64,000 bases of DNA from Phyllobates terribilis. Taxonomy: Eukaryota. The position numbers were made by a program, and so were the translations under genes. The stretch is taken from assembly GCF_046119375.1 (NCBI RefSeq), contig NW_027362768.1, positions 32,240,001 through 32,304,000 on the forward strand, read 5' to 3'. Under the pieces are notes generated by a model, which saw only the letters and a program-made list of their open reading frames with translations, had not been told where the DNA came from and searched no databases. Shown here piece by piece: positions 10,651-46,483 of the stretch. Numbering within the stretch: the stretch's first letter is position 1; each line of letters begins with the position of its first letter.

Positions 10651-10681
10651 CAAACTTTTATCTTTAGTCGCGTACAGTAGA

Positions 10682-10947
10682 GCAGCCACAGATGAAAAGC
10701 TCGTAGTTTAATTCTGTATACAGATAGCGGTCCGCCCCGAGGCTTGCTACTGCCAGTCCCAGCCACATTGCCTTGGGATGCCGCTCCAATGCTGTTGCCT
10801 TAGGGTCCTAGGGGTCCAAAGTGTTTCCTTTGAAAAAATTATTGTTTAAAGCAGGCAACCATGCATGAATACTTCAGCAAGGGATAATGAAATTGTACTC
10901 CATTTCTAGTTTTTTTTTTCAAACTGGGGCCATGATTAAGAGGGGAC
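10682..10947 (+). pseudogene. Decayed 18S rRNA fragment A (end of h18 region through ES6 to GCCATGATTAAGAGGG) inside hAT-1
   Basis: AAAAGCTCGTAGTT, GCGGTCCGCC, CTTTGAAAAAATT..TAAAGCAGGC and CTGGGGCCATGATTAAGAGGG are colinear with remembered vertebrate 18S. Confidence 0.8.
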
Positions 10948-10984
10948 CCGGTTGAACACAAAGTAAAGGAACTGGACGCACTCT

Positions 10985-11220
10985 CGGCCATCCAATTTCA
11001 AACCACCTACAGGTGAAGTTGCAGAGTACACACGTGTAATGGAGAATTAGATTTCTATTCCAGAAAGGCAACCTGATAAATGTGTACCACATCCAAGAAC
11101 GGCAGCAGACAAGCAAATTAACCACTTCTCAACTGAGTCAGCAGCTGATATTGCGAGGCAGACTAGTCATCTGTGAAAATTTAGAGGCTCTGTAATTGGA
11201 AAGAGTAGTTAAATCTTTTA
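10985..11220 (+). pseudogene. Decayed 18S rRNA fragment B (upstream of A in 18S) inside hAT-1
   Basis: CCTGATAAATGTGTACCACATCCAAGAACGGCAGCAGACAAGCAAATTAACCAC ~ 18S CCTGAGAAACGGCTACCACATCCAAGGAAGGCAGCAGGCGCGCAAATTACCCAC; GAGGCTCTGTAATTGGAAAGAG ~ GAGGCCCTGTAATTGGAATGAG. Confidence 0.8.
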
Positions 11221-11430
11221 ATTGAGCTGACACAAAGGTAGAGCAAAAATTATTTTTTATAGACACGCTGTTTGTACAGACAGACTACACAGAGGCTTTT
11301 GGGCACAGTAGCCCAACAGAAGCTAATAACAAATTTCTCCCACAGAGCATGTTTCTACACTTACCCTGCAGAAGCTGATGACAAATTTCAGCCACAGAGA
11401 ATGGGGAACATTACCCCCACAGATCCAAAA

Positions 11431-11502
11431 TGTCTGCTCCAGTAGCATACATTCCAAATGCCACCGATGAAAAGCTTGTAATATGATCTTGGATCAAGCT
11501 GG
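11431..11502 (+). pseudogene. Decayed 18S rRNA fragment C inside hAT-1
   Basis: GCTCCAGTAGCATACATT...AAAAGCTTGTAATATGATCTTGGATCAAGCTGG ~ 18S GCTCCAATAGCGTATATT...AAAAGCTCGTAGTTGGATCTTGGGATCGAGCTGG. Confidence 0.65.
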
Positions 11503-11619
11503 TGGTTTGGCTACCGGCAGTCCAATTAAAAATTTCCCCCACAGAAGCTATTAACAAATTTCACACCCACACAGTGGCCCACAGTACCCCCACAGACAGG
11601 GTTGCATGGTACACACAGC

Positions 11620-11990
11620 AGCTTAAAGGCACATTACTCACACAGATATGGGTTAAAGAATATACACAGCATCTTTTGGCAAACTACTCCCACAAAATTT
11701 GGTTAAAGAATAAACACAGCTGCTTTTGGCACAGTACTCCCACAGATATGGGTTAAAAAATACAGGGGCTTTTGACAAAGTAATCTCAGAGATATGGGTT
11801 AAAGAATACACACAGCGGCTTTTGGCAAAGTACTCTCACAGATATGGGTTAAAGAATACACACAGTGGTTTTTGGCAAATTACTCCCACAGATATGGGTT
11901 AAAGAATACTCACAGTGTCTTTTGGCAAAGTACTCCCACAGATATGGGTTAAAGAATACACACAGCGGCTTTTGGCACAGTACTATAACA
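11620..11990. repeat. ~48-bp subterminal tandem repeat of hAT-1 (~7 copies)
   Basis: TACTCCCACAGATATGGGTTAAAGAATACACACAGC repeated. Confidence 0.85.
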
Positions 11991-12389
11991 CACATGGTTG
12001 CCTAAGTGTAGAAAAATATGTTTACACACACATCACTCCCACCATCTCAGTTGAAAATTATAAAAACTTTTGGTTACCCAAGATATTATCACAGACATGG
12101 TTGCAGAGTACACATAGAGAGTATTTTTGTAAAACTGCGCACACGCAATACCTAATACTGTCCCTCATTAAATCTGCGTCCTGTCCCTATGCAAAGCAGA
12201 GTAGAAATAAAATATAAGAATCTTGATCCAGAAGGAATGGATCCAAGTGGAGAAGTAGGTGGACGTGGCGGTATAGGTGGAAGAAGTGGAGGAGGAGGTA
12301 GTAAACACAGTTTTTTCTTTTGGGGGGAGGAGGCCCCCAAATGAAGGGAACAGCAAATAGAGTTGAAGACTGGCTGGGTGTGGCTGATA

Positions 12390-15300
12390 TACTTGTCTAG
12401 TCATCCAAAGGTATGGACAAGTCCTGTGGGATCCACGCCTAGTTCATTTTAAGGAATGTTTGCTTCCCTACGCTGGATGTGGACAGGTGGATGCGTCTGT
12501 CTGTCATGACACCGTAGCCGTGCTAAGCACACATTCTGACAGTACACTTGCTGCAGGACACGCCAGCATCTCCAAAGCATAAAGGGCAAGCTCACACCAT
12601 GTGTCTATTTTAGAGACAGAGTAGTTAAATGGGGCAGACCCATCTTTTAGTACGTGGAGACATGTGGACACATTCTCTTCCACCATGTTGTTGTAATGCT
12701 GACACCACCATCTTATACGGACTGTATCAGATGATGGTGCCGGATGTTGTGGCATGCTCATAATGTTTTGCCACATTTTGGACATACTAACCCTGCCTTC
12801 CGAGGTGCTGGCAGTACCCCAGCCACGTTGGCGACTTCCTCCTTTGCCTCAGCCTTGTTATTTCATTGAGCTGTCAGGTGGGAAAGCAATTAATAGTTTT
12901 TCTACAAGCATGTGCTTGTATTCAGGCATTTTGTGATCCTTCTCCTTTGATGGAAGTAATGATGGTATGTTGTCCTTGTAGCGGGGATCCATCAGGGTGG
13001 TCACTCAGTAATCTGCACTGGTAACAATACGGGCAACTCGGCGGTCATTCTGCAGGCACTGCAGCATGTATTGGCTCATGTGTGCCAGGCTGCCCAGAGA
13101 AAATGACAAGCTGTCCATGGTGGGAGATATATCATCTCGGTACTCTGTATCCCCTCAGCCACACTCCTGGGCTGCTATGAGAGTTCACCCATAATTGCAC
13201 CCCACCAGGCCAGGCTTGAGGATTACCGGCACCAACAATTCATCTTTCTGCTATGTGATCCCAGTCTATAGCTCCTGCGCATTGTGGGATTTTCCCCACA
13301 AACAGAAGAGTTTAAGAACAGTCTGCTGTCGTTTCCCCCTGACTGTGCACAAGTTGGTGGTGCAGGTCTTCCTGTGACCTAATGAGGAGGCGGTGGAGTA
13401 AGAAGAGTAGGTGGAGGATGCAACCTGAACCAATAAACATCCAGCAATACTAGGTGGTGGTAGGGCATGAGCTAACTGTCTTCTGCCTCTGCCATAGCCG
13501 CCACTATACCAAGTGGCAGTTAGGGAGATATAACATCCTTGGCCATGCTTACTGGTCCATGCATTTGTGGTTATATGGACCTTGCCTCTGATGGAATTGT
13601 GCAGTGCTCATTTGATTTGGCCCTCAACATGTTTGTGCAGGACAGGGATGGCCTGCCTGGAAAAGTAGTGGTGCCTGGGAACAACGTACTGCGGGACAGC
13701 CACTGATATCAGTTTTTTAAAACTGTCAATCTCCCCCAGCCAGAATGGCATTTCAAAGTCCAGTCATTTGGAAATGCTGTCATTTAGGACCATGGCTCGT
13801 GGGTGGCTAGGTTGGTATCTCCTCTTTCTCTCAAGGATTTGGATGATGGAAAGCTGAACACTTCCATGTGACAGTGTGGAGATGCTCGGTGACACTGGTG
13901 GTGGTGATGGTGATGCTGTCGCATCCTCTTTTTGCGGGGAGATAGGTGGCCTTGTTGGTCATCAGTGGGAGGAAGAGGCTGAGACCACAGCAGAAGAGGG
14001 AACAGGAGGAGGCTCAGATCGGTCATGCTTTTTAAGTTGTGTATTCCACTGCATCTCGTGCATGGAATTCAGATGCCTCGTCATACAGGTGGTGCTCAGG
14101 TTCAGAACATTTATACCTCGCTTTAAGGTCTGACGGCACAGAGTGCAAACCAACTGTCACTTGACTTGTTGGCAGCACATTCCCTGAAGAAATGCCACAC
14201 CAGGGATCTCTTTTGAGCTGTCTTTAGTGTGCTTATATCAGCAGCGAGGTGGACAGTAGCAGCCGATTTACTGGCTAGGGGCTGCCACTGTGCCTTTGTT
14301 CCCTGCTCCCTCTTCTTCTATGATGTTGTAGCAGCATAGCAACCTCCTCTTCCTATGAACTGCACATGTCACTAGGATGATCTTTGCTCCATGTGGGGTC
14401 TCATACGTCCTCATCCCCCGCATCATCTTCCATCAACTCCTCAACCCTGCCTTCCTTACCATTCTGCACACTGCATAAAGATGCTGCATTTAGTAACTGA
14501 GTTTCTTCATCATCTGACATGTGCTGCGGTGGTCCTCTAACCATGTGCATTAGCCCTCCCATCATCCAACCTAAAAAGTGGATGGGCATCAGTACACTCT
14601 GTCTCTTCCACTCCTGGAGCAGGGGCAGGTGGATGGGCCATGGAAATCCAGCCAGTGGAGTCATCAAAAATCAGAAGAGACTGTTGCATGACTTGGGGCT
14701 CGGACTGCTTGGGAGATTTGCAATGGGGTGAGGTGGAAGACGGATGACTATGGTCCTTAGGTGGCAACTGTGTATTTTCTGCACTGAACCGGGTGGAAGA
14801 TAATGCAAAGGAAATGGAGTCGCTCTCAGCCATCCAATCTAACACCTTTTCAACATCTTGTGGCCTCACTATTCATGCAGCGGTATTCCGGCCTACGAAC
14901 GGACGCATAATGTCCTTTTGTCTGCATGCACCGGAGGAAGGTGTTGTATTTGGGCATGTAGCAGGTACAGAACTGTAGTAGTGGTGGAGGTGATAGTCTG
15001 CCCCTGATACTAAAAAGGGTTAAAAGTTCGTTCCTGAAGTTAGAACCCTCTGGGGATGTAGTTTGGCATGGGTAGGCTTAACCCTAACAGCCAGCCCAGT
15101 AGAGGGAGGGGGAACCGAGTGCTAGTGTCAAGTGCAGGAAGTGAGCACAGTCAGTAGTTGTGCAGTACAGCAGAAACCAGCAGACTCTGTAAGGGCTGCT
15201 AGGGTAGACGTGGGCCTAGAATCCCGGACAGTGGGTCAACAAAGAATCCCTCTGCAAGAGTCTCCCTTAGCCGGCCTGGGAACCTCGAGATTGTCACCAG

Positions 15301-15900
15301 GGGCTGGGGGCACATTCTCTCTGTGAGGCTGCATAAGAAGTTAGGACTCAAGTACTCATAGGCGGAGTGAAATGGGATCCAGATATACTGTCATTGGTGA
15401 GGAAGAAGCTCTAGGCCTAGAGAAGAAAACAACAGAGAAGCTTCACCTAAATCGGGAACCAGGCCTGAAGTTGTATCGGGTACCTGTGGGAAAGATGACA
15501 ACCTGTTAGGCCTTATCCTTTGTACCTGCCTGTAAATGCTGTAAATACTGCCAGTTACCAAGTAAAGCTCTGGCTGTTTTTATGAACTCTGTATCCTCTG
15601 AATGTATTGCTGCCCTTGTTCCAGAAGAGGAATCCCTGGAGTCAGAAGAGGCAGGCTGGCCAGAAGTACTGTAGGTGGGAAGCACCACATATACAGCAGC
15701 ATACCTGAGCAAGGACAGACTTTGTCTGTAGGGTGCCTAAGTGAGCATGGGCTACAGGTTGCCCATGACTACCTCATTTGGGCACCTTACAGAATGACCA
15801 CATCCTCTCCCTGCATCAGCTACACCACCACAACCATCAGAAGCTACACCAGCACCACCATGGCCATGGCCACATCCCTTATTTGATGCTCTCCTCAATT
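12390..15900 (-). pseudogene. hAT-1 transposase pseudogene (many stops/frameshifts; interrupted by solo LTR)
   Basis: BED-finger remnant (CTLCRQTLKRG...CMTRHLNSMH) and hATC motif ELALYALEMLACPAASVLSE; boundaries approximate. Confidence 0.85.
14974..15791 (+). mobile_element. Solo LTR inserted in hAT-1 transposase
   Basis: TGTAG...TTACA ends; 4-bp TSD GAAC/GAAT (one mismatch); AGTAAA polyA-like signal; hAT sequence resumes on both sides. Confidence 0.7.
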
Positions 15901-16560
15901 TTTGAAGTTTATTTTCTAAACACTACTCGGAAAGATGTGGCAGAGGAGTAGATTTATTTATTTGCAACAGTACTAGAAAAAATTCAACAGTTCTGAGAAA
16001 TTATTTCTTTGACCTAGAAATGGCAACTAGATGGCTGATGCAAATTATTTATTGCCCATCCTAATAAAAAACACACACCAGTCCAGAAAAAATCCTTTTG
16101 TGGCCTAGAAATGGCAACAGGATGGCTGATGCTATATATTGATTTGCAAAACTACTAGAGAACACACAGAGGTCCTGAAAAATTATTTCTTTGGCCCACT
16201 ATTGGCAATGAGATGGCTGATGCCAATTATGTATTATTCAGACTATTAGAAAACACACACCACTCCAGATAAATTATTTTTTGAACCTAGAAATGGCAGC
16301 TAGACAGCTTATGCCAATTATTTATTTCCCAGACTAATAAAACCACACACCAGTACAGATAAATTCTTTTTGGGGCCTAGAAATGGCAACAAGATGGCTG
16401 ATGCGATAAATTGATTAGCAAAACTACTAGAAAACACACAGTGGTCCTGGAAAATTATTTCTTGGGCCTCCTAATGGCAAAGAGATGGCTGACTCAAATA
16501 TTTATTTCTAAGACTGCTAGAAAACACACAGCGGTTTCAATGAACAGAACTCCAACAGGC
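15900..16560. repeat. ~115-bp 5' subterminal tandem repeat of hAT-1 (~5-6 copies)
   Basis: CCTAGAAATGGCAAC.AGATGGCTGATGC...AAAACACACAC.AGT repeated. Confidence 0.8.
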
Positions 16561-17254
16561 GTGGGGTTGCAGCGTCCACACAACAGCTTAAAGGACAGTA
16601 CTCACACAGATATGGGTGTTTAAGTGGCTTAAGACTTAAAGGACAGTACTTCCACAAGCAGGGGGGTGCAGAGTAAAAACAGCTGCTTAAAGGACAGTAC
16701 TTCCACATGCATGGGGGTGCAGAGTACACACAGGGGTTTTTAGCACAGTACTACCACTTATATGGGTTGCAGCGTACACAAAGCATTTTTTGGCAGCGCG
16801 CACAGTCACTATCTGTCTCTCACTCCAGCTGTGTCCTATCCCAAAACTAATGAGAGCATAATTGGGGCGGCACTCATTTTCCGGGCTGAGCCGGCCAATC
16901 ACAGCCATGCCAATATTTGGCATGGCTGTGATGGCTCTATAAGTACCCACAGTCTAAAAGCTTGTTGATTGGCTGCGCTGCAGCCCTTCAACAAGCTTTA
17001 TTAGTCAGGAAACAGGACATACAGTAAAAAGCCCGTGTTCGGGGATAGGTACCGGTACAAACCCCAAACTTTCCTGTTTGGGTTCGCTTATCCCTAGTTC
17101 TAATAGAATTTTCCTGACTTTTTTTAGTTGCATGTTACTGCGAAAGCCATGTTGTAAGAGAATGAGAAGTCCTAATATTCTGAACAGCCATGTTAAACCT
17201 TGCAGCCATCGTGTGCAAAGTTTGAGCTAATTAATTTTTGTGGCTAATGAGATG

Positions 17255-33120: not shown

Positions 33121-34046
33121 TTAGCGTCAGCATCCCACTTGTCTGTGACGCGCCCCCTGGGCCTGTGCTGTGCAGGGGGGATACCGGGAGCCGGATCGCT
33201 GGTGGTTGTAGTTCTCCGTGGCGGTGACCCGGTCCATGCCCAGGGCGGTCAAACCAGTGGCAGTCTATTGGTATTGTAATTGTCCGACTGCGCCACCCGT
33301 GGATTGCGGTCAGTGGGGACCGCCGCTGCGCTGCAGACCGCTGAGGCTGATGTTGTTTGCGCAGCCGAGTATGGGATAACTCCCCACGGGAGAAGTATTG
33401 CCTCAGGGCAGCTAATGTGGATGATGGGAGTGGTGGTGTGAGCGTCCCAGTAGTAATGGTGCTGGTGCGGCAAGGAATCACAGAGACGTGTGGTGCAGTT
33501 CAGGGTCTTTACTGATGGTATAAAGCAGACCCTCCCGGGAGTACTGGTTAGTGTTGAGCCACCCCCGTAGTGTTCGAGTTCGGTTCGGTTCGTCGAACAC
33601 CCGTGTGTTCACCGAACTGTTCGTCGAACTGTTCGTCGAACACCTTCGAACACCGTTAAAACCAATGGCAGGCAAACAAAAACACATAGAAACACATAGA
33701 AAACACCTTCAAAGGTGTCCAAAAGCTGACAAACTGCTCAGAAGACACAACTAACACATGGAAAAGTGACAAGTACATATAGTCATGCGAAAAGAAAAGA
33801 GGTGGAGGAGTAAAAGGAGGGGGAGACACAGATATAGGCATGTCATGCCCTTCTAAAATCCAAAAAGTGAGAAGCCGACACGTTCAGTCCGCTCCTGCCC
33901 GTGCCACCTCCGTGTCGCCGGGTTTGTGCCATAGCCGCGGTGAGCCCTGACGGCCAGCCCCCCTCTCCCAATACTGGTGCCTGTCCACTGGTGGGTCGAG
34001 CGAGCCCCCTGTGGTGGAGGCAGCTCTAAGCTTTTTAATTTAAATT

Positions 34047-34317
34047 GGCTCTCTAATTTGAATGAATACACTTTAAATCCATTTACAAGGATCTATTGGA
34101 GGGCAAGTCTCATGCCAGCAGCCGCGTAATTCCAGCTCCAGTAGCGTCCACTAAAGCTGCTGCAGTTAAAAAGCTTTTATAAGGATCGAGCTCGGCTGTC
34201 CACCGCAAGGCATCCTACTGCCAGTCCCAGCCCCTATGCCTTGGGGTGCCTCCTGATGCTCTTCACTGAGTATCCCGTGGTCCCGAAGCATTTCCTTTGA
34301 AAACATTAAGTGTCCAA
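34047..34317 (+). pseudogene. 18S rRNA fragment (h17-h18 530-loop through ES6) inside hAT-3 3' subterminal region
   Basis: GGATCTATTGGAGGGCAAGTCTCATGCCAGCAGCCGCGTAATTCCAGCTCCAGTAGCGT...GCTGCAGTTAAAAAGCT; about 85% identity by eye over the first ~130 nt to remembered vertebrate 18S. Confidence 0.92.
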
Positions 34318-34431
34318 CCTACAGGTGGTGTAGCTTGCTTAACAGCTGGGATAATCCGCTGACTAGCAGACACTGCTACTAGGCACAAAGTATTTCCTGG
34401 GCTAGATGCAGTTAAAAATTTGTAATTAGAT

Positions 34432-36250
34432 ACTCTCGTTGGATGCTGAGAAAGCATTCCATAGAGTCTCCTGGCACGCCATATATGATTCTCTTAAAAA
34501 GCTTGGGGTAGGGGTCTAGGGGACCCTTTTATAGCCAAAATCACGGCCCTGTATCACAATACGTCACCTAGGCTGAAGATAAATGGAACTGTAGCACCCT
34601 GAGGGCTCGGTTGCTACAGAGGTATTGCACCTCACCCAGAGGTGTGATATCTCACTCTCAGGTAAGGATGGAGTGTGGATCATGACCCGACACCTGCATG
34701 CATTACACCACATTGCCGTGGGGCAGGACGACCAATATGCCTCTGAGATGGGCACGACAGTCCCTGTCCCTGGCTGGAGTGGGGGGAGGGAACACTGAGG
34801 AAGGGGAACCCTGTAGTGCAGGAGCAGGGAGGAAGCAGTTCCTGGGTGCATTGAGAAGGGAGTATAAAAGGTGGGCACCATCTTAGTTCAGTGCAGAGAA
34901 GTCTGAGCAGAAGTGGCAGGGAGCAGGGGCTCTGCATGAGCTCTGCTCCGGAGGCGGGCCTAGTAACAGAGGCCCAGGCCTGGAAGAGGGAGAAGGAAGG
35001 AAGAGGAGCGGAGAAGGCTCCAGGAACAAGGAATGAAGGGATCCCAGGGGTGCGGACGGGCGAGTCGCCACCGCACGCCCAAATCCACCTGCGTGGAGGG
35101 GTCAGGCCAAAGGGGGAGACCGGTCCCCGAAACTAGTGGAGGCAGGAAACGACCCTCAGCTAGAAACCGGAGGCTGTGTCATTTTATGTGGCGCAGCCCC
35201 TCGCTACACCCGCTAGGAAGGCACCACATAGGGTCAGGGAAACTGGCGCCAAGTTTACCAAGAGGAGGCCCGAGGCAGCCGGACAGAAGGGTTGGTGAGA
35301 AAGGCCAGACAAAGGACACACAAAGGGGGTCCTGTGAAGCGCTCCAAAGTTATCTGGGAGTTGTCTGAGCCCCTCACCTGGTGAGCACAGTACGACGTGG
35401 GCAGCCGTTACCTGCAGACGTGGTCTGGATAATAAGAACTGTGAGTAAAGGCCCTGGACTGCATCACTGACTCCGTGTCGTTACTGCTGCTGCCCTGCAC
35501 CATCACCCCCATCGTCCGCATACACTGCCCTGAGGCTATACTCCTCCCGTGGGGAGTTATGCTACGCTCTGCTGCACCCACAACACCAGCCTCAGCGGTC
35601 TGCCCTGCAGCGGCGGTTCACTCTGACCGCAATCCACGGGTGGCGTAGTCGGACATTTAAACATCAAAACCACATAAATAGTTCCGCCACTGGTTTGACC
35701 ACCCTGAGCCACGGAACCGGGTCGCCGCCACGAAGACTACAACCACCAGCATCCACCAAAAAGGGTCCGGCTCCGGGTGTCCCAAGGCCCAGGGGGTGCA
35801 TCAGAACATTTTCATCACCTTTCACAATCACCAATGGGACAAGGCAGGGATGTCCTCTGTCCCCTCTCTTATACATCCTAGTGACGGAGCACCTGCTCTC
35901 ATCAATTCGCCATAACCCCAATATTAGGTGGATTGAGGTGGGAGGCACCGAGTACAAGTGCTCTCTATTTGCTGATGATGTCCTAGTATATATCACTCAA
36001 TCACATATATCCATCCATGCTGTTATGGCTGAAATAGATCACTTTGTTACATGGTCAAATTTTAAAATCAATGCAGCGAAGTCTGAGGCCCTCGATGTCT
36101 CCCTCCCCAAATCCATATAGGATTCCATCCAGTCCAACTTTCCCTTTGCCTGGCCCTCACAGGGTATCAAATACTTAGGAATTCCTATTCATAGAGACCT
36201 CTCCCATCTATGTTATCTTAATTTTGGGCCCTTTATTGAACAACTCCATA
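34432..36250 (+). mobile_element. L1-clade reverse-transcriptase fragment split by LTR-C
   Basis: LDAEKAFHRVSW ... NGTRQGCPLSPLL ... LFADDVLVY ... FKINAAKSE. Confidence 0.88.
34590..35803 (+). mobile_element. Solo LTR-C
   Basis: TGTAG...CATCA ends; perfect TSD GAAC (34586-34589, 35804-35807); TATAAAA near 34863; AGTAAA near 35444. Confidence 0.9.
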
Positions 36251-36325
36251 CAGACCACGGTTGGCAAGTTAGAACTGTAAGATTCACTACGTGAACCACT
36301 GGTGTTTTGTGGAAAAGCACATGTA

Positions 36326-37660
36326 CACTGTGTTCCAAATTATTATGCAAAAAGTGTTTAGGAGTGATAAACTCATTGATGGTGATGTGTGTCAGAGCTC
36401 TTTATATCACTGTAAGCAATTGCAGACACCTGTGCTAATTAGTTTGGCAGGTGTGTCCAATGAAAGGCAAGACTACTTAAGAAGGCTGTCTCACATTATT
36501 AAGCAGCCTACATTTTCTGCCAAAATGCGAAAGAAAAAGGATGTGTCGGCTGCTGAGAAGCAACAAATTGTGGAGTGTTTAGGTCAAGGCATGACTACAA
36601 TCAACATTGTGCGATGATCAGGATGAAGTGTCTTGGCAATCAAGAAGTATGTAGCTGATTCACAGTACACACGTGTGCGTGCTGATAAGGGCAAATTGAG
36701 GACTCTTTCCTACAGGCAATTACGTCAGGTTAAAAGAGCAGCGGCAAAAAAGCCTTGTCATAGCAGCAGATAAGTTTTTGAAGCTGCTGGTGCCTCCAAC
36801 GTCCTCCGAACAACAAGATGCAGGGTCCTTCAGAGGTTTGCAGCTGTGCATACGCCATCCTGTCGACATCCTCTATCCACTTCACACAAGCAGAAACGGC
36901 TCCAGTGGGCCAAACATTACATGAAGACTGATTTCAAAACTGTTTTGTTCACGGTTGAGTGCCGTGCAGCGCTCGATGGTCCAGATGGATGGAGTGGAGG
37001 ATGGCTGGTTGATGGACACCCCATGCAAACACCGCTACAGCGCCAACAAGGAGGAGGTGGAGTAATGTTTTGGGCTGGAATCATGGGGAGAGAGATTGTC
37101 GGCCCCTTTAGGATCCCTGAAGGCGCTAAAGATGAACTCCATAATGTATGTGGATTTTCTCAAACAGCACTTCCTGCCATGGTTCAAAAAGAAGAACCGT
37201 GTATTTCACAGCAAGATCATTTTTTTGCATGATAATGCACCATCTCATGCTGCACATAAAATATCTGCAACTCTGGCTGATATGGGCATAAAAGGGGACA
37301 AACTTATGGTGTGACCCACATGCTCCCCTGACCTCTACCCCATTCAGAACCTCTGGAGCATCATCAAAAGGAGTGTCTATGATGGCGGGAGGCAGTTCAC
37401 ATCTAAGCAACAGCTCTGGGAGGGTATTCTGTCCTCATGCAAAACAATTGAAGCAGAAACCATCCAAAACCTGACAAATTCAATGGACGAGAGAGTTCAG
37501 AAGCTCCTTTCGAACAAGAAAGGATGTGAAAATGTAACATCACCTAGAATAAAGTTTTGAGTTGAAAACTGTTTGATTTCAGTTTCTAATAACCTGCTAA
37601 TGCTTATAATTTCAAAAATGACCATTTTTTGGTCTTTATTAAAATGAAAAGGTTCATCGA
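36326..37660 (+). mobile_element. Tc1 element, right end deleted, inactive transposase
   Basis: TA then CACTGTGTTCCAAATTATTATGC TIR; LFTVECR (first D lost), HDNAPSH, PDLYPIQNLW (E to Q); frameshifts. Confidence 0.88.
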
Positions 37661-37789
37661 AAAGTTTGGGGGATCTAAGAGTGTGGCAACCCAGTAGTCA
37701 TGATTACTTCGAATTCTGACAATATGAGGGTCATGTTGCAGGTAGTGCAGCAAGAAGGCACTTATGTGTCTTGCGCATCTCGGAGCCCC

Positions 37790-38060
37790 AAAATTATTTT
37801 CCGGGCTAGATGCAGCTAAAAATTATTATTAATTTTAAATCTGGTGGAGCTTAGTATAGATGGCCTAATAGGATCAGTGCTGCACACTGCTACAAAGCCC
37901 AAATTATTTTCCAGTCAAGATACAGATAAACATGATTAGTAATTTTAAATCTGGTGGAGCTTATTATAGATGGGCTAATAGAATCAGTGCTGCACACTGC
38001 TACAAAGCCCAAATTATTTTCCAGCCAAGAAACAGATAAACATGATTAGTAATTTGAAAG
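37790..38060. repeat. ~108-bp repeat (2.5 copies), same family as the 110-bp satellite
   Basis: GCTAGATGCAG.TAAAAATT...GTATAGATGG.CTAATAG. Confidence 0.75.
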
Positions 38061-38103
38061 CTTAAAACGGTTGGTAGGGTGATTTTAACCAATCATCAAG
38101 CTT

Positions 38104-41100
38104 TTACTCTCCCCAGGATGACACAGGGGTAAAAAAGTCATTTCGGATCCATGATTTGTTCATCTTTATGAACGTGAGTCTGCCTACATTATCAGTGGAG
38201 AGCCACGTGCGCTTATCTGTCAGCACACCACCAGCAGCGCTGAACACACGTTCAGACAGAACGCTGGCTGCGGGGCATGACAAGATCTCCAAGGCGTAAG
38301 TGGCTAGCTCCGGCCATTTATCCAGATTGGAAGCCCAAAAAGAGCAAGGGTCCAGTGACACAGTCATAGCTTCAATGTTTACTTGGAGATACTCCTGTAC
38401 CATCGTCTCTAGGCGTTGACTATGTGTCAGACTTCTTGTCTCCTGTGGCCTTGCAAAGGATGGGCTAAAAAAGTGGTGAAATGATTCCGCAAAATTGATG
38501 TTACCAGCAGATACTGAGGTTCTGTTACGGTTTGAGTGCTGAACACTTGACGGTCCACGGTTGGCAAGTTGGAACTGTGAGATTCACTACGTGCACCACT
38601 GGTGTTTTGTGGAAAAGCACATGTAAGATTCTGCAACAGTCTCTGCTGATACTCCTGCATGCGTGCATCCCTTTCTATGGCAGGAATAATTTCTGCAAAT
38701 TTACTTTTGTACCGGGGATCTAACAGTGTGCCAACCCAGTAGTCAGGATTATTTCTAATTCTCACAATTCGAGGGTCATGTTGCAGGTAGTGCAGCAAGA
38801 AGGCACTCATGTGTGTTGCGCATCCAGGAGCACCAAGTCCCTGTTGTGTTGGTGGCGAGGTAACAATCATGCTTCCTTCCTCTGTCCTCTCCCCCCAACC
38901 TCGCACAACAGAAATGTGATCAAGGTCTCCCTCATCTGATGAGTCTTCCATCAGTTCGTCCTCCACTTCTTCCTGGGCTCCTGCACCTTCCTCACTAGTT
39001 TGGCTGCTACCATGCGCCCTGGTAAAACCATCTCCCCCACCCTCACATGCCTGCCGCCTTGTTGCTGCTGACCGTCTGGACCTTGCAGATGTTAGCCCTT
39101 CCACATACAACTCCTCCTCCTCTACTTCCTCCACCTCCTCTTGTGCCACCACCTGTCTCCGAATTCTGTTTAACATGTGCTCCAGCATGTAAATCACCGG
39201 AATAGTCATGCTGATAATGGCATCGTCAGCACTAAACATCTTCGTCGCCATTTCAAAACTGTGCAGAAGGGTGCATAGGTCCCTGATCTGAGACCACTCC
39301 TCCAGCGTGATTTGCCCCACCTCTGGATCTCGTTGGCCCAGGCTATACGTCAGAACGTATTGCACCAGGGCTTGTCGGTGCTGCCACAGTCGCTGCAACA
39401 TGTGCAGAGTTGAATTCCACCGGGTAGGCACATCGCATTTTAGCCGGTGAAGTGGCAGGCCCAACGACTTCTGTAGAGATGTAACTCGCTGAGCTGCGGG
39501 ATGCGAACGGTGGAAGTGAGGACACAGCAACCGTGCCCTCTGCAGAAGGCCATCTAGTCTGGGATAGTGGGCTAAAAATTGCTGGACAACCAGGTTCAAC
39601 ACGTGAGCCATACAATGCACGTGTGTGACATTGCCCCGGCGAAGGGCCGCACCCAGGTTTGCAGCATTGTCGCACACGGCCTTCCCTGGTTTCAGGTCCA
39701 GTGGAGAAAACCATTCATGAAATTGGTTCTCCAGAGCTGACCACAACTCCTCAGCTGTGTGACTCACATTTCCCAGACATTTCAAAGTAAAAACCGCCTG
39801 ATGACGTTGAGCCCTACTGCCAGCATAGTAAGGAGGTGTGCAGGATCCCTTCTGCGCAGTTAGAAAGCTTGTGGCATGACCAAACAGGCTTTGGGTGCAG
39901 GTGGAAGACCGAGAGGAGGTTGAGGAGGCAGAAGCAGTGGAGGAACTTTGACATAAAGAGGATTGACGCACAACTCGTGGGGACGGCAAGACTTGGACAG
40001 CAGCCGCTTGTCCTGCTGTCACCATAGTTACCCAGTGCCCAGTCAGCGACATGTAACGCCCCTGTCCATGCCTACTCGTCCAAGTGTCTGTGGTGAAATG
40101 CACCCTGTCATACACAGAGTTTCTCAAAGAAGCGATGATGTTGTGTGCGACATGCTGGTGGAGCGCAGGCACACCTTTCTTTGAGAAGTAGTGCCGACTG
40201 GGCATCTGGTACTGGGGCACTGCGACGGACATAAGGTCTCGAAAATCCTCTGTGTCCACCAGGCGGAAAGGCAGCATTTCTGTAGCCAAGAGCTTGCAGA
40301 TGGTGAAATTCAACCTCTTAGCTTTCTCATGGCTAGGAGGAAATGGTCTTTTACTTGTCCACATCTGAGGGACCGAGGGCTGGCTATTGTGCTTAGACGG
40401 GGTTGATAAGGGTGTCCCCGGCAAACTGCCGGTCTGTGAGGAAGATGCAGGCGGACATGTTAGGTTGCCTTGATCCAAAGGTGGTGCTATCGATGTCGGA
40501 CAGCGCTCAACACCAGCTGGTGTTACCACCTCCAAAGAAAATGATGACCTGCCAATCACGCTGGCTGTTGCGGGTAAAGAGGTGGCAGGTCTGCGCCCCA
40601 AAACAGGTGTGACTGCTGTCCCCCCAGTCACAGAGGATGAAGAGGCCGCGGATGCACAAGATATGGCAGACGGTGGTTGGCCCGGCCGGCTAGGCCGCAT
40701 TGTAGCACACTGAGCTTCCCAATGCAACTTATGCTTCATGTCCATGTGCCGGTTCATGCATGAAGTACTCAAACTATGTATTTTTTGGCCTCTACTTAGC
40801 TTTTGCTGACAAATGTTACAGATAACACGAGTTGGGTCATCTTTATCGATCTGAAAAAATGCCCAGGCTATGCAAGGCTTAGCACCCATGCGACCTGAAG
40901 AGCCACCACGACTTGTGGTGAGAGGCAGAGTTGTGTTTGAGGATGCAGTTGTTGACGTGCTTCCAGTACTACGTCTCTGTCCAGGAAGGCGCAACCTGAC
41001 CTCGTCGTCACTAGCATCTTCCTCCACCTCCTCTGCTGACTTCATCTCTTGGCTGACTGTGGGTTGACAGTAAGTGGGATCTCCAACCTCATCATCATCA

Positions 41101-41803
41101 CCCTGTGCGTTATCACACCCGTCGTCCTCAGAGCCAACCTGTTCCTGCCCTGACAAAAACTAAAGTTGTCGCTCCAATCAGGTATTTGAGTCTCATCATC
41201 GTCTTCCTCATTGTCTCCACCAACAGGAGTTACAGTTTGGGAATGAGGGTCTACATTATGGTCAGAACCTTCTGCGTCTGGTCCTGGATCCGACTCATAA
41301 AGATTCTGGGCATCAGTGCAGATCATTTCCTCGTCTGGATTCACAGAAGCGCTGGAGTCGACCTCTGATTCCCAGGCTATAGTATGAGTAAACATCTCTG
41401 CAGACTCAACCATCTGTTCTACCTCATACTCAGACGGGCAGCTGGAGATTTGGGAGCTATGAGGAAGCAAGTGCGATTGGGGTGACACCTTTGAGGACTG
41501 GAGTATTTGGGATGTTGAAGTTGATGTGGAGGAGAGCCCACTTAAAGGAGCACTTGATATCCGTTGAAGCACCTGCTGTTTTTGTGCCTCATCTGGAATT
41601 TGTAGCGATTGGCGTGGCCGTAAGAAAGGGATCTTATCACATTGTCCGCTAAAAGAAGTAGACATTTTAGTTTGGCTGGAAGATGGTCTTTCTTCTGCAG
41701 ATGTTGCTGTTGCTTTAACACCTACCCCACGGACACAACCTTTTTTCCCCTTCCCAACACGCCTATTCCCCTTTCCACCAGCAGCAGGCCTTTTTCCACT
41801 CAT
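38104..41803 (-). pseudogene. hAT-3 transposase, ~1,230 codons, interrupted only by two frameshifts (~41160 and ~38550)
   Basis: Joins ORFs 41042-41803, 38427-41156 and 38104-38403; BED finger, FTTDTW (D), VCDNAAN (D), CMAH, TRWNS, CPAASVLSERVFS (E) and hATC domain all present. Confidence 0.92.
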
Positions 41804-41929
41804 TTTGGTGGTTACCTAATTCACAACTCTGGAGTTGTTTGCACAAAAAAACAATGGATGGGAACCGAGCAGAGCTGAGTGGCCAAACTGTGGTATTAGG
41901 CCAAAACTATTGGCTGGGTTAGATGCAGA

Positions 41930-44900
41930 AAAAAATTATATTCAATTTGCAACCTGATGGAGGTCAATATAGATGGACAAAAAGAACAAGTCCCACACAC
42001 AGCTAGAAGCCCAAATTTTTTTCAGAGGTAGATGCAGAAAAAAATTGTATTCAGTTTGCAACCTGATGGAGGTCAGTATAGATGGACTAATAGAAGAAGT
42101 CCTACACACAGCTAGAAGCCCAAATATTTTTTCAGAGGTAGATGCAGAAAAAAAATATATTCAGTTTGCAACCTGATGGAGGTCAGTATAGATGGACTAA
42201 TAGAGAAAGTCCCACACACTGCTAGAAGGCCAAATATTTTTTCAGAGCTAGATGCAGAAAAAAATTATATTCAGTTTGCAACCTGATGGAGGTCAGTATA
42301 GATGGACTAATAGAACAAGTCCCACACACAGCTAGAAGGCCAAATATTTTTTCAGAGCTAGATGCAGATAAAAATTATTTTTAATTTGCAACCTGATGGA
42401 GGTCAGTATAGATGGACTAATAGAGAAAGTCCCACACACTGCTAGAAGGATGCAGAAAAAAATTATATTCAGTTTGCAACCTGGTGGAGGTCAGTATAGA
42501 TGGACTAATAGAACAAGTCCCACACACAGCTAGAAGCCCAAATATTTTTTCAGAGGTAGATGCAGAAAAAAATTATATTCAGTTTGCAACCTGATGGAGG
42601 TCTGTATAGATGGATTAATAGAACAAGTCCCACACACAGCTAGAAGCCCAATATTTTTTCAGAGGTAGATGCAGAAAAAAAATATATTCAGTTTGCAACC
42701 TGATGGAGGTCAGTATAGATGGACTAATAGAGAAAGTCCCACACACTGCTAGAAGGCCAAATATTTTTTCAGAGCTAGATGCAGACAAAAAAATTATTTT
42801 TAATTTGCAACCTGATGGAGGTCAGTATAGATGGACTAATAGAGAAAGTCCCACACACTGCTAGAAGGCCAAATATTTTTTCAGAGCTAGATGCAGATAT
42901 AAATTATTTTTAATTTGCAACCTGATGGAGGTCAGTATAGATGGACTAATAGAGAAAGTCCCACACACTGCTAGAAGGCCAAATATTTTTTCAGAGCTAG
43001 ATGCAGAAAAAAATTATATTCAGTTTGCAACCAGATGGAGGTCAGTATAGATGGACTAATAGAACAAGTCCCACACACAGCTAGAAGGCCAAATATTTTT
43101 TCAGAGCTAGATGCAGATAAAAATTATTTTTAATTTGCAACCTGATGGAGGTCAGTATAGATGGACTAATAGAGAAAGTCCCACACACTGCTAGAAGGCC
43201 AAATATTTTTTCAGAGCTAGATGCAGAAAAAAATTATATTCAGTTTGCAACCTGGTGGAGGTCAGTATAGATGGACTAATAGAACAAGTCCCACACACAG
43301 CTAGAAGCCCAAATATTTTTTCAGAGGTAGATGCAGAAAAAAATTATATTCAGTTTGCAACCTGATGGAGGTCTGTATAGATGGATTAATAGAACAAGTC
43401 CCACACACAGCTAGAAGCCCAAATATTTTTTCAGAGGTAGATGCAGAAAAAAATTATATTCAGTTTGCAACCTGATGGAGGTCTGTATAGATGGATTAAT
43501 AGAACAAGTCCCACACACAGCTAGAAGCCCAATATTTTTTCAGAGGTAGATGCAGAAAAAAAATATATTCAGTTTGCAAACCTGATGGAGGTCAGTATAG
43601 ATGGACTAATAGAGAAAGTCCCACACACTTCTAGAAGGCCAAATATTTTTTCAGAGCTAGATGCAGACAAAAAATTATTTCTAATTTGCAACCTGATGGA
43701 GGTCAGTATAGATGGACTAATAGAGAAAGTCCCACACACTGCTAGAAGGCCAAATATTTTTTCAGAGCTAGATGCAGATATAAATTATTTTTAATTTGCA
43801 ACCTGATGGAGGTCAGTATAGATGGACTAATAGAGAAAGTCCCACACACTGCTAGAAGGCCAAATATTTTTTCAGAGCTAGATGCAGAAAAAAATTATAT
43901 TCAGTTTGCAACCAGATGGAGGTCAGTATAGATGGACTAATAGAACAAGTCCCACACACAGCTAGAAGGCCAAATATTTTTTCAGAGGTAGATGCAGATA
44001 AAAATTATTTTTAATTTGCAGCCTGATGGAGGTCAGTATAGATGGACTAATAGAGAAAGTCCCACACACTGCTAGAAGGCCAAATATTTTTTCAGAGCTA
44101 GATGCAGACAAAAAATTATTTTGAATTTGCAACCTGATGGAGGTCAGTATAGATGGACTAATAGAGAAAGTCCCACACACTGCTAGAGGGCCAAATATTT
44201 TTTCAGAGCTAGATGCAGACAAAAAATTATTTTTAATTTGCAACCTGATGGAGGTCAGTATAGATGGACTAATAGAGAAAGTCCCACACACTGCTAGAAG
44301 GCCAAATATTTTTTCAGAGCTAGATGCAGATAAAAATTATTTTTAACTTGCAACCTGATGGAGATCAGTATAGATGGACTAATAGAGAAAGTCCCACACA
44401 CTGCTAGAAGGCCAAATATTTTTTCAGAGCTAGATGCAGAAAAAAATTATATTCAGTTTGCAACCTGATGGAGGTCAGTATAGATGGACTAATAGAACAA
44501 GTCCCACACACAGCTAGAAGCCCAAATATTTTTTCAGAGGTAGATGCAGATAAAAATTATTTTTAATTTGCAACCTGATGGAGGTCAGTATAGGTGGACT
44601 AATAGAGAAAGTCCCACACACTGCTAGAAGGCCAAATATTTTTTCAGAGCTAGATGCAGACAAAAAATTATTTTGAATTTGCAGCGTGATGGAGGTCAGT
44701 ATAGATGGACTAATAGAACAAGTCCCACACACTGCTAGAAGGCCAAATATTTTTTCAGAGCTAGATGCAGAAAAAAATTATATTCAGATTGCAACCTGAT
44801 GGAGGTCAGTATAGATGTACTAATAGAACTAGTCCCACACACTGCTAGAAGCCAAAATATTTTTTCAGAGCTAGATGCAGAAAAAAATTATATTCAATTT

Positions 44901-44935
44901 GCAACCTGATGGAGGTCAGTATAGATGGACTAATA
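41930..44935. repeat. 110-bp satellite (~27 copies) in hAT-3 5' subterminal region
   Basis: Unit GGCCAAATATTTTTTCAGAGCTAGATGCAGAAAAAAATTATATTCAGTTTGCAACCTGATGGAGGTCAGTATAGATGGACTAATAGAGAAAGTCCCACACACTGCTAGAA. Confidence 0.95.
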
Positions 44936-46483
44936 GAATGATGCTATGCCCAAAAGATTTTACTTCACTAGGTGCAGTAAAAAAATTGGTATTCTATACA
45001 CAGGTGGTATATCTTGCAACACAGATAGGCTACTCCACTGACTAACACACTCTGCAATAGGCCAAAAAAAGGCTTAGCTTTGCTAGATTCAGCCAAATGC
45101 TGTGAAAAAAACTTGCACAGCACTGGCACAGACCTGCCTGGCAAAAACTGATAGGAACTGATGTAACCTAGTCCTGAAAAGGACTGCAATTACAATTAGT
45201 CTTTACTCCCACAATCTATCTATTTAAGAACACAGACCTGCCTGATAAAAGTCGTAGGAAATGCTGTAACCTAGTCCTTAAAAGGACTGCAATCACAACT
45301 ATTCCCTACTCCCAAGCTATCTGTAGATTTGTGCGAAAATTGGCTTGAAATTAACAAGGTATATCGCACACAGCAACAGCGGTGCCGTCTAACACGCAGC
45401 TGCAGCAGTGAGAAAATGGTGGCGACGGGGAAAATGGCTTGGTCTTATAGGGCAAGGACATGTGACATACACTGCCAAAGACACATGCCCTTGCTTGTGT
45501 GAAAAAAAGCACTTCGCTCCGTGTGTGCGCTGCTGATAGGCTGACAGATTGCACCTCCCCACTGTAAATGCGGGAAAGAGAAAAAAAAATGGAGATCTTC
45601 ATTATTCCTGCAGAGATACATCCCCTGCCCCTCCCCCCACCCCGCTGTACACTCAAACTGCGTATTAACATTAATTTTCATCATTACTGAGAAAAAATCC
45701 AGTTATGATTTTGGTGCACGAACAGTTATCGAACATAACCTTGAACAGCCGAATTTTTCTCAAATCGTTCGTGTTCGCCGAACGGCTCGAATACCGCCCA
45801 AAACAGCTCGAATTTGAGATTGGCGAACAGTTCGAGTCGAGCAACGCTCATTTCTACTACTGGTTAGCAGTAGGGGCCTGGTCAGTCTGTGAGCAAGCAG
45901 GATCTCCCCTGGCCAGGTGGAGTTGTAGGCCTCCCCGACTATCTGCACTCTTTCCTGGCTACCTTGCTCTATGCGGGTAGAAGTAGCCCACGTCCCTGAG
46001 TATACCATGTGGTGCTCACCCGTATGGCTGGTGACTTGGGGCCTTCCGTCAGCCTTCGCTTCACGATGGCGGTGCTGGTCCCTTGCTTGTGACCGTGCCT
46101 TCGGGTTTCTAAGGCCAGAGGACACGGAATCCCCTGCCGGTTGGATTCTGCTGCTGGACCTGGATGTCCCCACAGCCTCGGACTCCTTGTCCGGGTTTAG
46201 TGTCTTCAGCCAAGGCGAGATATCTAGCTTCCAGCTTCTGGCACTCACTCCTGCTCCTACAGAGCTCCTAGTTCTTGCTTTCCCTGTGTCTGGAACTTCA
46301 CTCCAGGCTCTGACTGACTTAATCCCGCCCCAGACCCAGTTTATAAGGGCAGATTCCTCCCCTCCCAGGTCTGGGTGGGCCATGTTGCATGCTTAGGGCT
46401 CCTGACCAGAGAAACCTCCCACTTGCTCTCAGACATAATATCTCTATTACTGTGGCAATCAGACCCCTGGGGTGTCACATCTG

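What the first reader, a model, noticed from the sequence alone, without database searches (positions are those of the whole stretch)
34047..34317. hAT transposon carries a captured 18S rRNA segment, antisense to its transposase
Seen: ~270 bp colinear with 18S from h17 through the 530-loop motif GCCAGCAGCCGCG(G)TAA into ES6, ~500 bp inside the 3' TIR of a TSD-bounded hAT. hAT-1 has 18S pieces at the equivalent position and orientation, which argues for an inherited component of the family rather than a chance insertion. Known: some transposons insert into rDNA (Pokey, R2, Dada); I do not know of hATs that carry 18S cargo. Inference: transposase transcripts reading into this region would be complementary to 18S, which could recruit ribosomes, generate small RNAs, or tie the element to nucleolar chromatin.
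Basis: partly seen in the sequence, partly recalled or inferred. Interest (0 to 1): 0.8.

Follow-up and report, generated by a model that had tools for sequence, protein, structure and literature searches.

The report
Frog hAT transposon carrying 18S piece
A very abundant cut-and-paste (hAT) transposon of a poison-frog genome carries a decayed ~310-base piece of the 18S ribosomal RNA gene as fixed baggage behind its transposase gene; this is an unusual cargo for a known kind of event, not a working RNA.

Summary
Rfam finds eukaryotic SSU rRNA at 34005-34191 (+), 66.6 bits, E 1.6e-15. By alignment the homology runs to about 34318, from h17 through the 530 loop (one G lost) and ES6.

The piece lies 456-770 bp inside the 3' end of a 12.3-kb hAT (33549-45856, minus strand, 8-bp target duplication matching 7/8). 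It is antisense to the BED/hAT-dimerisation transposase.

It is not a private insertion. Contigs from public runs of two coded organisms tile 33549-37585 at about 99% identity and cross both junctions of the piece. Depth in the 18S bins is half or more of that at the element's tip. The cargo is therefore fixed in a young (about 1% diverged), very high-copy family, together with an L1 reverse-transcriptase scrap and other debris.

The Ranitomeya imitator subfamily has the same tip and 110-bp repeats but a different filler in that slot.

hAT-1 (10017-17096) does carry overlapping 18S pieces in the same arm and orientation. Only the 18S part aligns between the two elements, and their transposases are as distant as those of 18S-free hATs. 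That points to module exchange or a repeated capture, not simple vertical descent.

Nothing supports a function. This scan has already noted the same cargo many times elsewhere in this genome. It is a new member of a known kind (Pack-hAT / filler DNA).

The parts
33549..45856 (-). Whole hAT element (12.3 kb) that carries the 18S piece. Target-site duplications lie at 33541-33548 (GTACTGGT) and 45857-45864 (CTACTGGT).
   Evidence: TIR-like ends TAGTGTTGAGCC / TAGAAATGAGCG. Contigs of run X9 turn into unlike flanks at 33549.
33549..33868 (-). 3' terminal and subterminal region, with repeated TTCGTCGAAC-type motifs. It is shared with R. imitator copies.
   Evidence: 86-89% identical to L004 19951-20273 and L003 35461-35721.
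33869..34004 (.). GC-rich filler of unknown source, at the left edge of the variable slot.
   Evidence: Absent from the R. imitator copies. Bridged by high-depth contigs X9 record 17 and X15 record 9. No Rfam hit and no match elsewhere in the window.
34005..34318 (+). Decayed 18S rRNA gene fragment (Rfam model ~430/497 to ~785: h17, h18/530 loop, ES6, start of h21 3' strand). It is sense on the + strand, so antisense to the transposase.
   Evidence: RF01960 66.6 bits, E 1.6e-15. Aligned to an undecayed 18S segment of L073. Over the 141 nt aligned to that segment (about 34178-34318), 4 of the outgroup's 14 CpGs are kept (5 CpGs in all).
34321..34435 (.). One unit of the element's own 110-bp repeat. 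Other family copies have more units here.
   Evidence: Similar to 37788-38062 and 41898-44938. Backward joints 34420->34357 in other copies (table 5c). Same repeat in R. imitator copies.
34436..36325 (+). L1-like reverse-transcriptase scrap (34436-34585 and 35804-36325), split by a 1.2-kb inserted repeat (34586-35803). It is family cargo, not private to this copy.
   Evidence: Pfam RVT_1, E 1.2e-15. Translation. Joints 34585->35804 at low depth and continuous high-depth tiling by X9 contigs.
36326..37668 (+). Tc1/mariner-like element, present in only part of the family.
   Evidence: Weak Pfam HTH_Tnp_Tc3_2 hit (E 0.0079, 16.9 bits, below the curated cut-off of 31.5). Joint 36325->37669 (skips 1343, ends CA..TG) at depth 345 against 372 in X9, and 181 in X15.
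37669..37801 (-). Scrap of a hAT transposase coding region (residues ~771-814) displaced into the 3' arm.
   Evidence: tblastn, 75% identity to the element's own ORF. 88.5% DNA identity to L004 18098-18219.
37788..38062 (.). 110-bp repeats (2.4 units) just downstream of the transposase stop.
   Evidence: TRF.
38104..41803 (-). Transposase gene, in three ORFs in this copy (41803-41042, 41156-38427, 38403-38104). It is therefore broken by at least two frame changes.
   Evidence: Pfam zf-BED 2.3e-10 and Dimer_Tnp_hAT 5.4e-15. Colinear with the R. imitator copy L004 15138-18827 at 67-86% aa identity.
41898..44938 (.). 110-bp satellite array (about 27 units) in the 5' arm.
   Evidence: TRF.
10017..17096 (-). 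hAT-1: an older hAT of another lineage. It has a perfect TSD GTTCTAAT, decayed transposase remnants at 14156-12406, and 18S pieces at about 10660-10962 and 11440-11520 (+ strand) in its 3' arm.

Best explanation
The 18S-like stretch is passive cargo of a multicopy hAT DNA transposon. It is a 'Pack-hAT' or filler-DNA case.

Inferred: a master copy of this lineage acquired a piece of 18S rDNA, or of its transcript, in the non-coding arm between its 3' subterminal region and its internal 110-bp repeats. The most likely route is template switching during repair of a double-strand break or of the gap left by excision.

Shown: the same arm also holds a GC-rich filler, an L1 reverse-transcriptase scrap, another repeat, a displaced scrap of transposase coding sequence and, in part of the copies, a Tc1 element. 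The whole mosaic is copied with the element at each transposition. It is now present in a very large number of nearly identical copies in this frog and in related organisms.

Shown: the piece decays like methylated junk DNA. It has no rRNA function and, as far as the evidence goes, no function for the element.

Partly shown: the overlapping pieces in hAT-1 most likely descend from the same early, longer captured module passed between hAT lineages by the same repair process.
For: - The 18S identity is significant.
- The element is bounded by TIRs and an 8-bp TSD and encodes a BED + hAT-dimerisation transposase.
- Family-wide presence is shown. Run X1 (DNA, organism A) laid 717,402 contigs. Summed word depth was 3-6e5 in every bin from 33594 to 37700, against 3.2e4 in the flank. 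The filler and 18S bins (3.1e5, 4.8e5, 3.2e5) compare with 4.9-6.2e5 at the tip.
- Run X9 (another organism) tiles 33549-37585 with contigs of depth 300-550 at about 99% identity. Record 17 crosses the left junction. Record 18 (746 nt, 8 differences) crosses filler, 18S, 110-bp unit and RT scrap.
- This copy differs from the family majority at about 1% of sites. At two of them (34304, 34318) the majority letter is the true 18S letter (table 3).
- Runs of six coded organisms hold 0.69-0.95 of the exact 31-mers of 33549-34435.
- The slot is a filler site. R. imitator copies L003 and L004 share the 320-bp tip and the 110-bp repeats but carry about 600 bp of a different sequence there, RT-like by eye.
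- Decay: over the 141 nt aligned to the outgroup (about 34178-34318), 4 of the outgroup's 14 CpGs are kept (5 CpGs in all). About 20% of sites differ from the undecayed outgroup. One G of the 530 loop is lost.
- Precedent: hAT is the commonest carrier of captured host fragments in animals, with multicopy cases in Xenopus tropicalis (PMC8277862). Anolis hAT/hobo elements hold filler DNA that includes other TEs (PMC3014272).
Against: - The capture route is not shown. No parental rDNA junction is available. The possible microhomology at the right junction (AAA-CAGG in both 18S and the 110-bp unit) is blurred by decay.
- The same window of 18S, in the same arm and the same orientation, turns up in two hAT lineages. 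Their transposases are no closer to each other than to 18S-free lineages. That is somewhat unexpected for random filler.
- The piece is about 10-20% from true 18S while family copies are about 1% from their consensus. It was therefore carried for a long time before the burst. That is compatible with neutrality but also with retention.
- Depths are summed k-mer depths of contigs at 80% likeness or more, not copy numbers. True rDNA adds to the 18S core bin.
Confidence: 0.78

Rival explanations
1. This is passive cargo, but it was acquired through RNA. A cDNA of an rRNA fragment, made by a LINE reverse transcriptase, was captured at a break in the master copy, perhaps together with the neighbouring L1 scrap. 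On this reading no rDNA was copied at the DNA level.
For: An L1-like RT scrap lies 118 bp to the right in the same orientation. rRNA is the most abundant RNA. An unrelated retrovirus-like contig (L073) holds an 18S segment that ends within a few bases of the same 18S position (...CAAAGCAGGC). That hints at a favoured end for RT-made copies of this region.
Against: There is no poly(A) tract and no duplication around the piece. A unit of the element's own 110-bp repeat separates the 18S from the RT scrap. The RT scrap is an internal part of ORF2, not a LINE 3' end, so this is not the classical LINE-chimera structure.
Confidence: 0.15
2. This is a functional module. Read-through transposase transcripts would carry about 300 nt antisense to 18S (h17-ES6). 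That segment would be kept because it pairs with rRNA or pre-rRNA, feeds small-RNA pathways or affects translation. This would explain its presence in two hAT lineages in the same arm and orientation.
For: There is recurrence of the same 18S window and orientation in hAT-1 and in this family. The piece was retained through a long pre-burst history. A contig of a run guessed to be RNA covers 33719-34277 at depth 229. On the minus strand the only ATTAAA in the arm lies just downstream of the antisense piece, at 34034-34039.
Against: There is heavy CpG decay and there are indels. The R. imitator subfamily does without the piece. Between 2.4 and 3.8 kb of debris, with AATAAA signals at 469 and 1872 nt, lie between the stop codon and the piece. 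The kind of run X15 is a guess and its strand is unknown. The stranded raw-read RNA run X21 showed no reads there, but it is from another organism.
Confidence: 0.06
3. This is a private event or an artefact: a chance insertion of an rRNA pseudogene into this one copy, or rDNA reads mis-assembled into the locus.
For: None was found.
Against: The same junctions are seen in high-depth contigs of independent runs from two organisms. Exact words are held by runs of nine studies. The piece is far too decayed to come from rDNA reads.
Confidence: 0.01

Closest known systems
Pack-TIR / Pack-hAT elements of animals (Tan et al. 2021, PMC8277862), e.g. Pack-hAT-N8_XT of Xenopus tropicalis
   Same: A short host-derived fragment (median 224 bp there, about 310 bp here) sits inside a hAT between TE sequences. 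It is multicopy and mobilised to many sites. The proposed origin is template switching or gap filling.
   Different: Here the cargo is an rRNA gene fragment, not a piece of a protein-coding gene. The carrier is a full-length, transposase-encoding element with a mosaic of several fillers. Copy number is very high, whereas multicopy Pack-TIRs were rare (4 of 281) and low-copy in that survey. The capture is old relative to the burst.
hobo/hAT elements of Anolis carolinensis with filler DNA (Novick et al. 2011, PMC3014272)
   Same: Autonomous and non-autonomous hATs are enlarged by extraneous DNA that often includes other TEs and is then amplified with the element.
   Different: No rRNA cargo was reported there.
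rDNA-derived modules in TEs (review by Garcia et al. 2024, PMC10946416, Table 2): 5S-promoter SINEs and Cassandra/Ajax TRIMs, SINE28 (28S), IGS repeats in Pokey
   Same: A ribosomal DNA fragment is built into a mobile element and dispersed with it.
   Different: In the 5S cases the module supplies a Pol III promoter, which is a benefit. No 18S fragment and no hAT appear in that table. No promoter or other role is evident here.
rDNA-targeting elements (Pokey, R1/R2, Dada)
   Same: They associate a TE with rRNA gene sequence.
   Different: Those insert into rDNA. This element carries the rDNA piece internally, and its flanks are not rDNA.

Membership tests
hAT superfamily DNA transposon | 8-bp target-site duplication | tested here: met
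   GTACTGGT / CTACTGGT (7 of 8) for 33549-45856. GTTCTAAT / GTTCTAAT (8 of 8) for hAT-1.
hAT superfamily DNA transposon | Short terminal inverted repeats | tested here: met
   TAGTGTTGAGCC... and TAGAAATGAGCG... are imperfect, about 11 of 15. hAT-1 has TAGAGATGAGAGAAC / TAGGGATAAGCGAAC. The end is confirmed by contigs diverging at 33549.
hAT superfamily DNA transposon | Transposase with BED zinc finger and hAT C-terminal dimerisation domain | tested here: met
   Pfam PF02892, 2.3e-10, and PF05699, 5.4e-15. Relatives carry PF02892/PF27039/PF05699. The gene is frame-broken in this copy.
Pack-TIR (captured host fragment in a TIR transposon) | Non-TE host sequence flanked on both sides by sequence of one TIR element | tested here: met
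   The 18S piece lies between the hAT 3' tip (33549-33868) and the hAT 110-bp repeat (34321-34435). Both are shared with R. imitator copies that lack the piece.
Pack-TIR (captured host fragment in a TIR transposon) | Identifiable parental copy in the same genome | tested here: inconclusive
   The parent is the 18S gene by Rfam and by alignment to an undecayed 18S segment. This species' own rDNA could not be obtained with the tools.
Pack-TIR (captured host fragment in a TIR transposon) | Multicopy: same cargo and junctions at different insertion sites | tested here: met
   high-depth contigs cross both junctions in two organisms, and there are unlike flanks beyond 33549; words are held by runs of nine studies.
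Functional SSU rRNA gene | Full-length (~1.8 kb) with intact universal core (530 loop GCCGCGGTAA) and paired helices | tested here: not met
   Only about 310 nt are present. One G of the 530 loop is missing. Many pairs are broken in the Rfam alignment. About 20% of sites differ from the undecayed segment.
rDNA-targeting transposon (Pokey/R2/Dada type) | Element inserted at a specific site of rDNA, so that rDNA flanks the element | tested here: not met
   Flanks at 33300-33548 and beyond 45857 are other repeats. There are no rRNA hits there.
rRNA-derived SINE (SINE3, SINE28) | Short retroposon whose head is the rRNA-derived part, with a LINE-type tail | tested here: not met
   The piece is internal to a 12-kb TIR element. 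There is no tail and no retroposon boundaries.

The most novel reading that the evidence does not exclude
The same stretch of 18S (h18 to ES6) sits antisense in the 3' arm of two hAT lineages. Their transposases are as far apart as those of 18S-free lineages, yet the two pieces share derived changes. If this is not just module swapping of junk, the antisense-18S segment would be a selected 3'-arm module of frog hATs. It could, for example, modulate translation or silencing of element transcripts through pairing with rRNA or pre-rRNA, and it would be passed between lineages.
Probability: 0.07. Interest if true: 0.75.

Novelty: new member of a known kind. Interest (0 to 1): 0.35.

Why it matters
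It is a clear vertebrate example of a high-copy, transposase-encoding hAT that has carried a host rRNA gene fragment for a long time. A 2024 review of rDNA-TE associations lists no such cargo and carrier combination.

There are practical consequences for poison-frog genomics. Dispersed 18S-like copies probably far outnumber the real genes. They can distort rDNA copy-number estimates, 18S FISH or qPCR, rRNA filtering of reads and repeat annotation.

The mosaic 3' arm has a different filler in the same slot in a sister subfamily. It also has a Tc1 presence/absence subfamily and a module shared with another hAT lineage. It is therefore a readable record of repeated template switching during break repair.

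Tried and rejected
1. I first read the L1 RT scrap, the 1.2-kb piece inside it and the Tc1 as private nested insertions in this copy. I also considered an rRNA-LINE retro-chimera. I rejected this after the scan's notes gave the lead and one search showed these parts tiled by high-depth contigs in another organism. Only the Tc1 is subfamily-specific.

2. More distant relatives, the Anomaloglossus (L001) and Hyperolius (L002) ZBED6-like loci at 34-39% aa identity, have no SSU hit. They are uninformative because too distant.

3. Vertical co-inheritance of the 18S piece by hAT-1 and this family was rejected. The flanks are not alignable. Coding DNA is 58-63% identical, the same as for 18S-free hATs.

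4. I tried to obtain the frog's own 18S as outgroup. The metagenome pattern scan gave 119 or more mostly chance hits. Only L073 held an 18S segment, and it is bird-type, inside a retrovirus-like contig. Read laying did not list the rRNA letters. The shared-derived test therefore rests on a proxy outgroup.

5. Pfam on the small ORFs of the R. imitator filler gave nothing. Its RT-like nature rests on motifs read by eye.

6. Literature searches for hAT with 18S cargo found no precedent.

7. A protein search seeded with translated 18S was considered and dropped as unworkable, because of stops and short ORFs.

Full report
**Observation**

A scan of the whole window against Rfam gives one family above its gathering score. 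It is eukaryotic SSU rRNA at 34005-34191 on the + strand, 66.6 bits, E 1.6e-15 (58.8 bits on a sub-range).

- The well-aligned core is model ~497-625, which is window ~34043-34172. It includes h17, h18 and the 530 loop, read here as GCCAGCAGCCGC-GTAA with one G missing.
- To the right, the Rfam consensus is uninformative because ES6 is variable.
- Alignment to an undecayed vertebrate-type 18S segment shows that homology continues through ES6 to ...TTTCCTTTGAAAACATTAAGTGTCCAA at about 34318. That segment turned up in locus L073.

**The carrier**

Transposase ORFs lie on the minus strand at 41803-38104. Pfam finds a BED zinc finger (2.3e-10) and the hAT C-terminal dimerisation domain (5.4e-15). 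The gene is in three ORFs in this copy.

- The element's ends are at 33549 (TAGTGTTGAGCC...) and 45856 (reverse strand TAGAAATGAGCG...).
- The flanking 8-mers are GTACTGGT and CTACTGGT.
- The element is 12.3 kb. The 18S piece starts 456 bp inside its 3' end and is antisense to the transposase.

From the 3' end inward the arm reads as follows:

1. A 320-bp tip, 33549-33868.
2. A GC-rich filler, 33869-34004.
3. The 18S piece, 34005-34318.
4. One 110-bp repeat unit, 34321-34435.
5. An L1-like RT scrap, 34436-34585 and 35804-36325 (Pfam RVT_1 1.2e-15), split by a 1.2-kb repeat.
6. A Tc1-like element, 36326-37668.
7. A displaced scrap of transposase coding sequence, 37669-37801.
8. 110-bp repeats, 37788-38062.
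9. The stop codon at 38104.

**Is it private or family-wide?**

Runs of six coded organisms, from nine studies, hold 0.69-0.95 of the sampled 31-mers of 33549-34435. I laid four runs on 33300-37700 at 80% likeness or more.

- In run X1 (DNA, organism A), 717,402 contigs were laid. Summed word depth is 3-6e5 in every bin from 33594 on, against 3.2e4 in the left flank.
- In the same run, the filler bin and the two 18S bins (3.1e5, 4.8e5, 3.2e5) are half or more of the tip bins (6.2e5, 4.9e5).
- In run X9 (another organism, only 15 Mb of contigs), contigs of depth 300-550 tile 33549-37585 at about 99% identity.
- X9 record 17 crosses the left junction. Record 18 (746 nt, 8 differences) runs from the filler through the 18S and the 110-bp unit into the RT scrap.
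- Two X9 contigs turn into unlike sequence exactly at 33549.
- A form without the Tc1 (joint 36325->37669) has about the same depth as the form with it.

The 18S piece, the filler and the RT scrap are therefore fixed parts of a young, very abundant family. The Tc1 marks a subfamily.

This copy differs from the majority at about 1% of sites. At 34304 and 34318 the majority letter is the true 18S letter.

The scan's earlier notes on other pieces of this genome say the same. They gave me the lead that the RT scrap is cargo, and I then tested that lead.

**The slot is variable between subfamilies**

The closest proteins in the public collection are from frogs. The best partial matches (74-76% aa identity, rising to 86% in the tblastn) are in Ranitomeya imitator.

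- Two R. imitator loci hold copies of the same lineage.
- L004 has the full transposase at 15138-18827. L003 and L004 both have the 3' tip (86-89% identical to 33549-33868) and the 110-bp repeats.
- Between tip and repeats they carry about 600 bp of a different sequence, with reverse-transcriptase-like motifs by eye and no 18S.
- Pfam did not confirm the small ORFs there.

The junction between tip and repeats is therefore a place where fillers are acquired or replaced.

**hAT-1**

hAT-1 spans 10017-17096 with a perfect TSD GTTCTAAT. It has decayed transposase remnants on the minus strand (14156-12406).

- In the arm downstream of those remnants it has + strand 18S pieces. One is at about 10660-10962 (Rfam hit 10700-10962, 45.3 bits, model 627 to ~890). 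A shorter duplicate is at about 11440-11520.
- Between the two elements' 3' arms, only the 18S part aligns (70% over 177 nt, E 4e-22). Everything else is at chance level.
- The transposase DNA is 58-63% identical, the same as between this element and three 18S-free hATs in the window.

Sequence under no constraint cannot be better kept than the coding region it travelled with. The 18S pieces are therefore younger than the split of the two lineages.

I used the undecayed segment in L073 as a proxy outgroup, over 137 ungapped sites.

- This element's piece differs from the outgroup at 27 sites and hAT-1's piece at 35.
- At 14 sites both differ, and at 9 of those they differ in the same way. My rough expectation for independent decay is about 3.
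- There are also three shared indels.
- Three of the nine are CpG-to-TpG changes, which recur easily. Several others lie in ES6, where the frog's true gene may differ from the bird-type outgroup.
- Two shared changes lie where the Rfam consensus is invariant or nearly so. They are A to C in TTTACTTTG and loss of G in TTAGAG.
- Two more lie in the upstream core: CCAATAGC to CCAGTAGC, and the T to C change in GTATATT.

I therefore favour (about 65%) one early, longer module (model ~430-890 or more). It would have been passed between lineages by template switching and then trimmed differently. I give two independent captures about 30%. This needs the species' own 18S to settle.

**Mechanism**

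Shown:

- The piece is cargo inside a TIR element.
- It shares its junctions across a very large family.
- It is decayed. Over the 141 nt aligned to the outgroup, 4 of the outgroup's 14 CpGs survive (5 CpGs in all). About 20% of sites differ from the undecayed segment. The 530 loop is damaged.

Inferred:

- It entered a master copy as filler during repair of a break or excision gap, by template switching onto rDNA or an rRNA-derived copy. This is the mechanism proposed for animal Pack-TIRs, of which hAT is the commonest carrier (PMC8277862), and for the filler-laden hAT/hobo of Anolis (PMC3014272).
- A capture through cDNA cannot be excluded. The arguments for it are the RT scrap nearby and a similar 3' breakpoint in the retrovirus-like L073. 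The arguments against it are that there is no poly(A), no duplication, and a hAT repeat unit lies between the pieces.

**Function**

- A read-through transposase transcript would carry antisense 18S by geometry. However, 2.4-3.8 kb of debris with two AATAAA signals lies in between.
- The sister subfamily lacks the piece.
- The only stranded raw-read RNA run (X21, another organism) had no reads there.
- Run X15, whose kind is only guessed to be RNA, holds a 560-nt contig over 33719-34277 at depth 229, strand unknown. It also shows a large peak over the 18S core that is probably true rRNA.

I found nothing that supports a role.

**Comparison and novelty**

A 2024 review of rDNA-TE associations lists 5S-promoter SINEs and TRIMs, SINE28 and the IGS repeats of Pokey. 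It lists no 18S fragment in a DNA transposon (PMC10946416). Poison-frog genome papers report abundant hAT but no such cargo.

This is therefore a new member of a known kind. The scan has already met the same cargo repeatedly on other DNA of this genome.

**Limits**

- Depths are summed k-mer depths, not copy numbers.
- Organism names were coded.
- The outgroup is a proxy.
- L073 looks like an avian oncogenic retrovirus contig. It was only described and used as a source of an undecayed 18S segment.

Noticed in passing
L073:1-1824 (contig from a gut metagenome): This retrovirus-like contig has a retroviral env TM-like tail (ORF 9-233), a v-Myb-like ORF (467-1555) and the Rfam Retro_dr1 element (1613-1705, 98.8 bits). 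By eye it resembles avian myeloblastosis virus. Between env and myb (about 136-300) it holds an undecayed, bird/amphibian-type 18S ES6 segment. That segment ends within a few bases of the 18S position where the frog hAT piece ends. It may be a real capture, RT template switching during library preparation, or a chimeric assembly.
   Followed up: partly
L003:34450-35110 and L004:19380-19950: Ranitomeya imitator copies of the same hAT lineage carry about 600 bp with reverse-transcriptase-like motifs (YLDDF etc., by eye) in the slot where this window has the GC-rich filler plus 18S. Pfam gave no hit on the short ORFs.
   Followed up: partly
window:36326-37668: The Tc1/mariner-like element inside the hAT arm is present in only part of the family. 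A joined form without it has about equal depth in run X9, so two subfamilies amplified, one before and one after this insertion.
   Followed up: partly
window:34034-34039: On the minus strand the only ATTAAA of the arm lies immediately downstream of the antisense 18S piece. AATAAA signals lie 469 and 1872 nt after the transposase stop. This is a consensus match only.
   Followed up: no
window:46480-58930: A 6.5-kb array of a 52-bp satellite (47159-53656) lies between two inverted, 84-92% identical hAT 3' parts (46651-47175 against 58930-58410, and 53336-54258 against 58018-57097). This hAT lineage has 133-bp and 52-bp repeats and no 18S.
   Followed up: no
window:37669-37801: A 130-bp scrap of transposase coding sequence (residues ~771-814, 75% aa identity to the element's own ORF) lies displaced in the 3' arm. 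It is also matched at 88.5% in R. imitator L004 18098-18219, where it is part of the intact gene.
   Followed up: partly
window:33549-34435 in public runs: Runs of six differently coded organisms hold 69-95% of the exact 31-mers of this arm. Near-identical copies are therefore shared by several taxa, through close relatives, a recent common burst or transfer.
   Followed up: no
window:79-445: There is a run of 367 N (assembly gap or masked). It was left alone.
   Followed up: no
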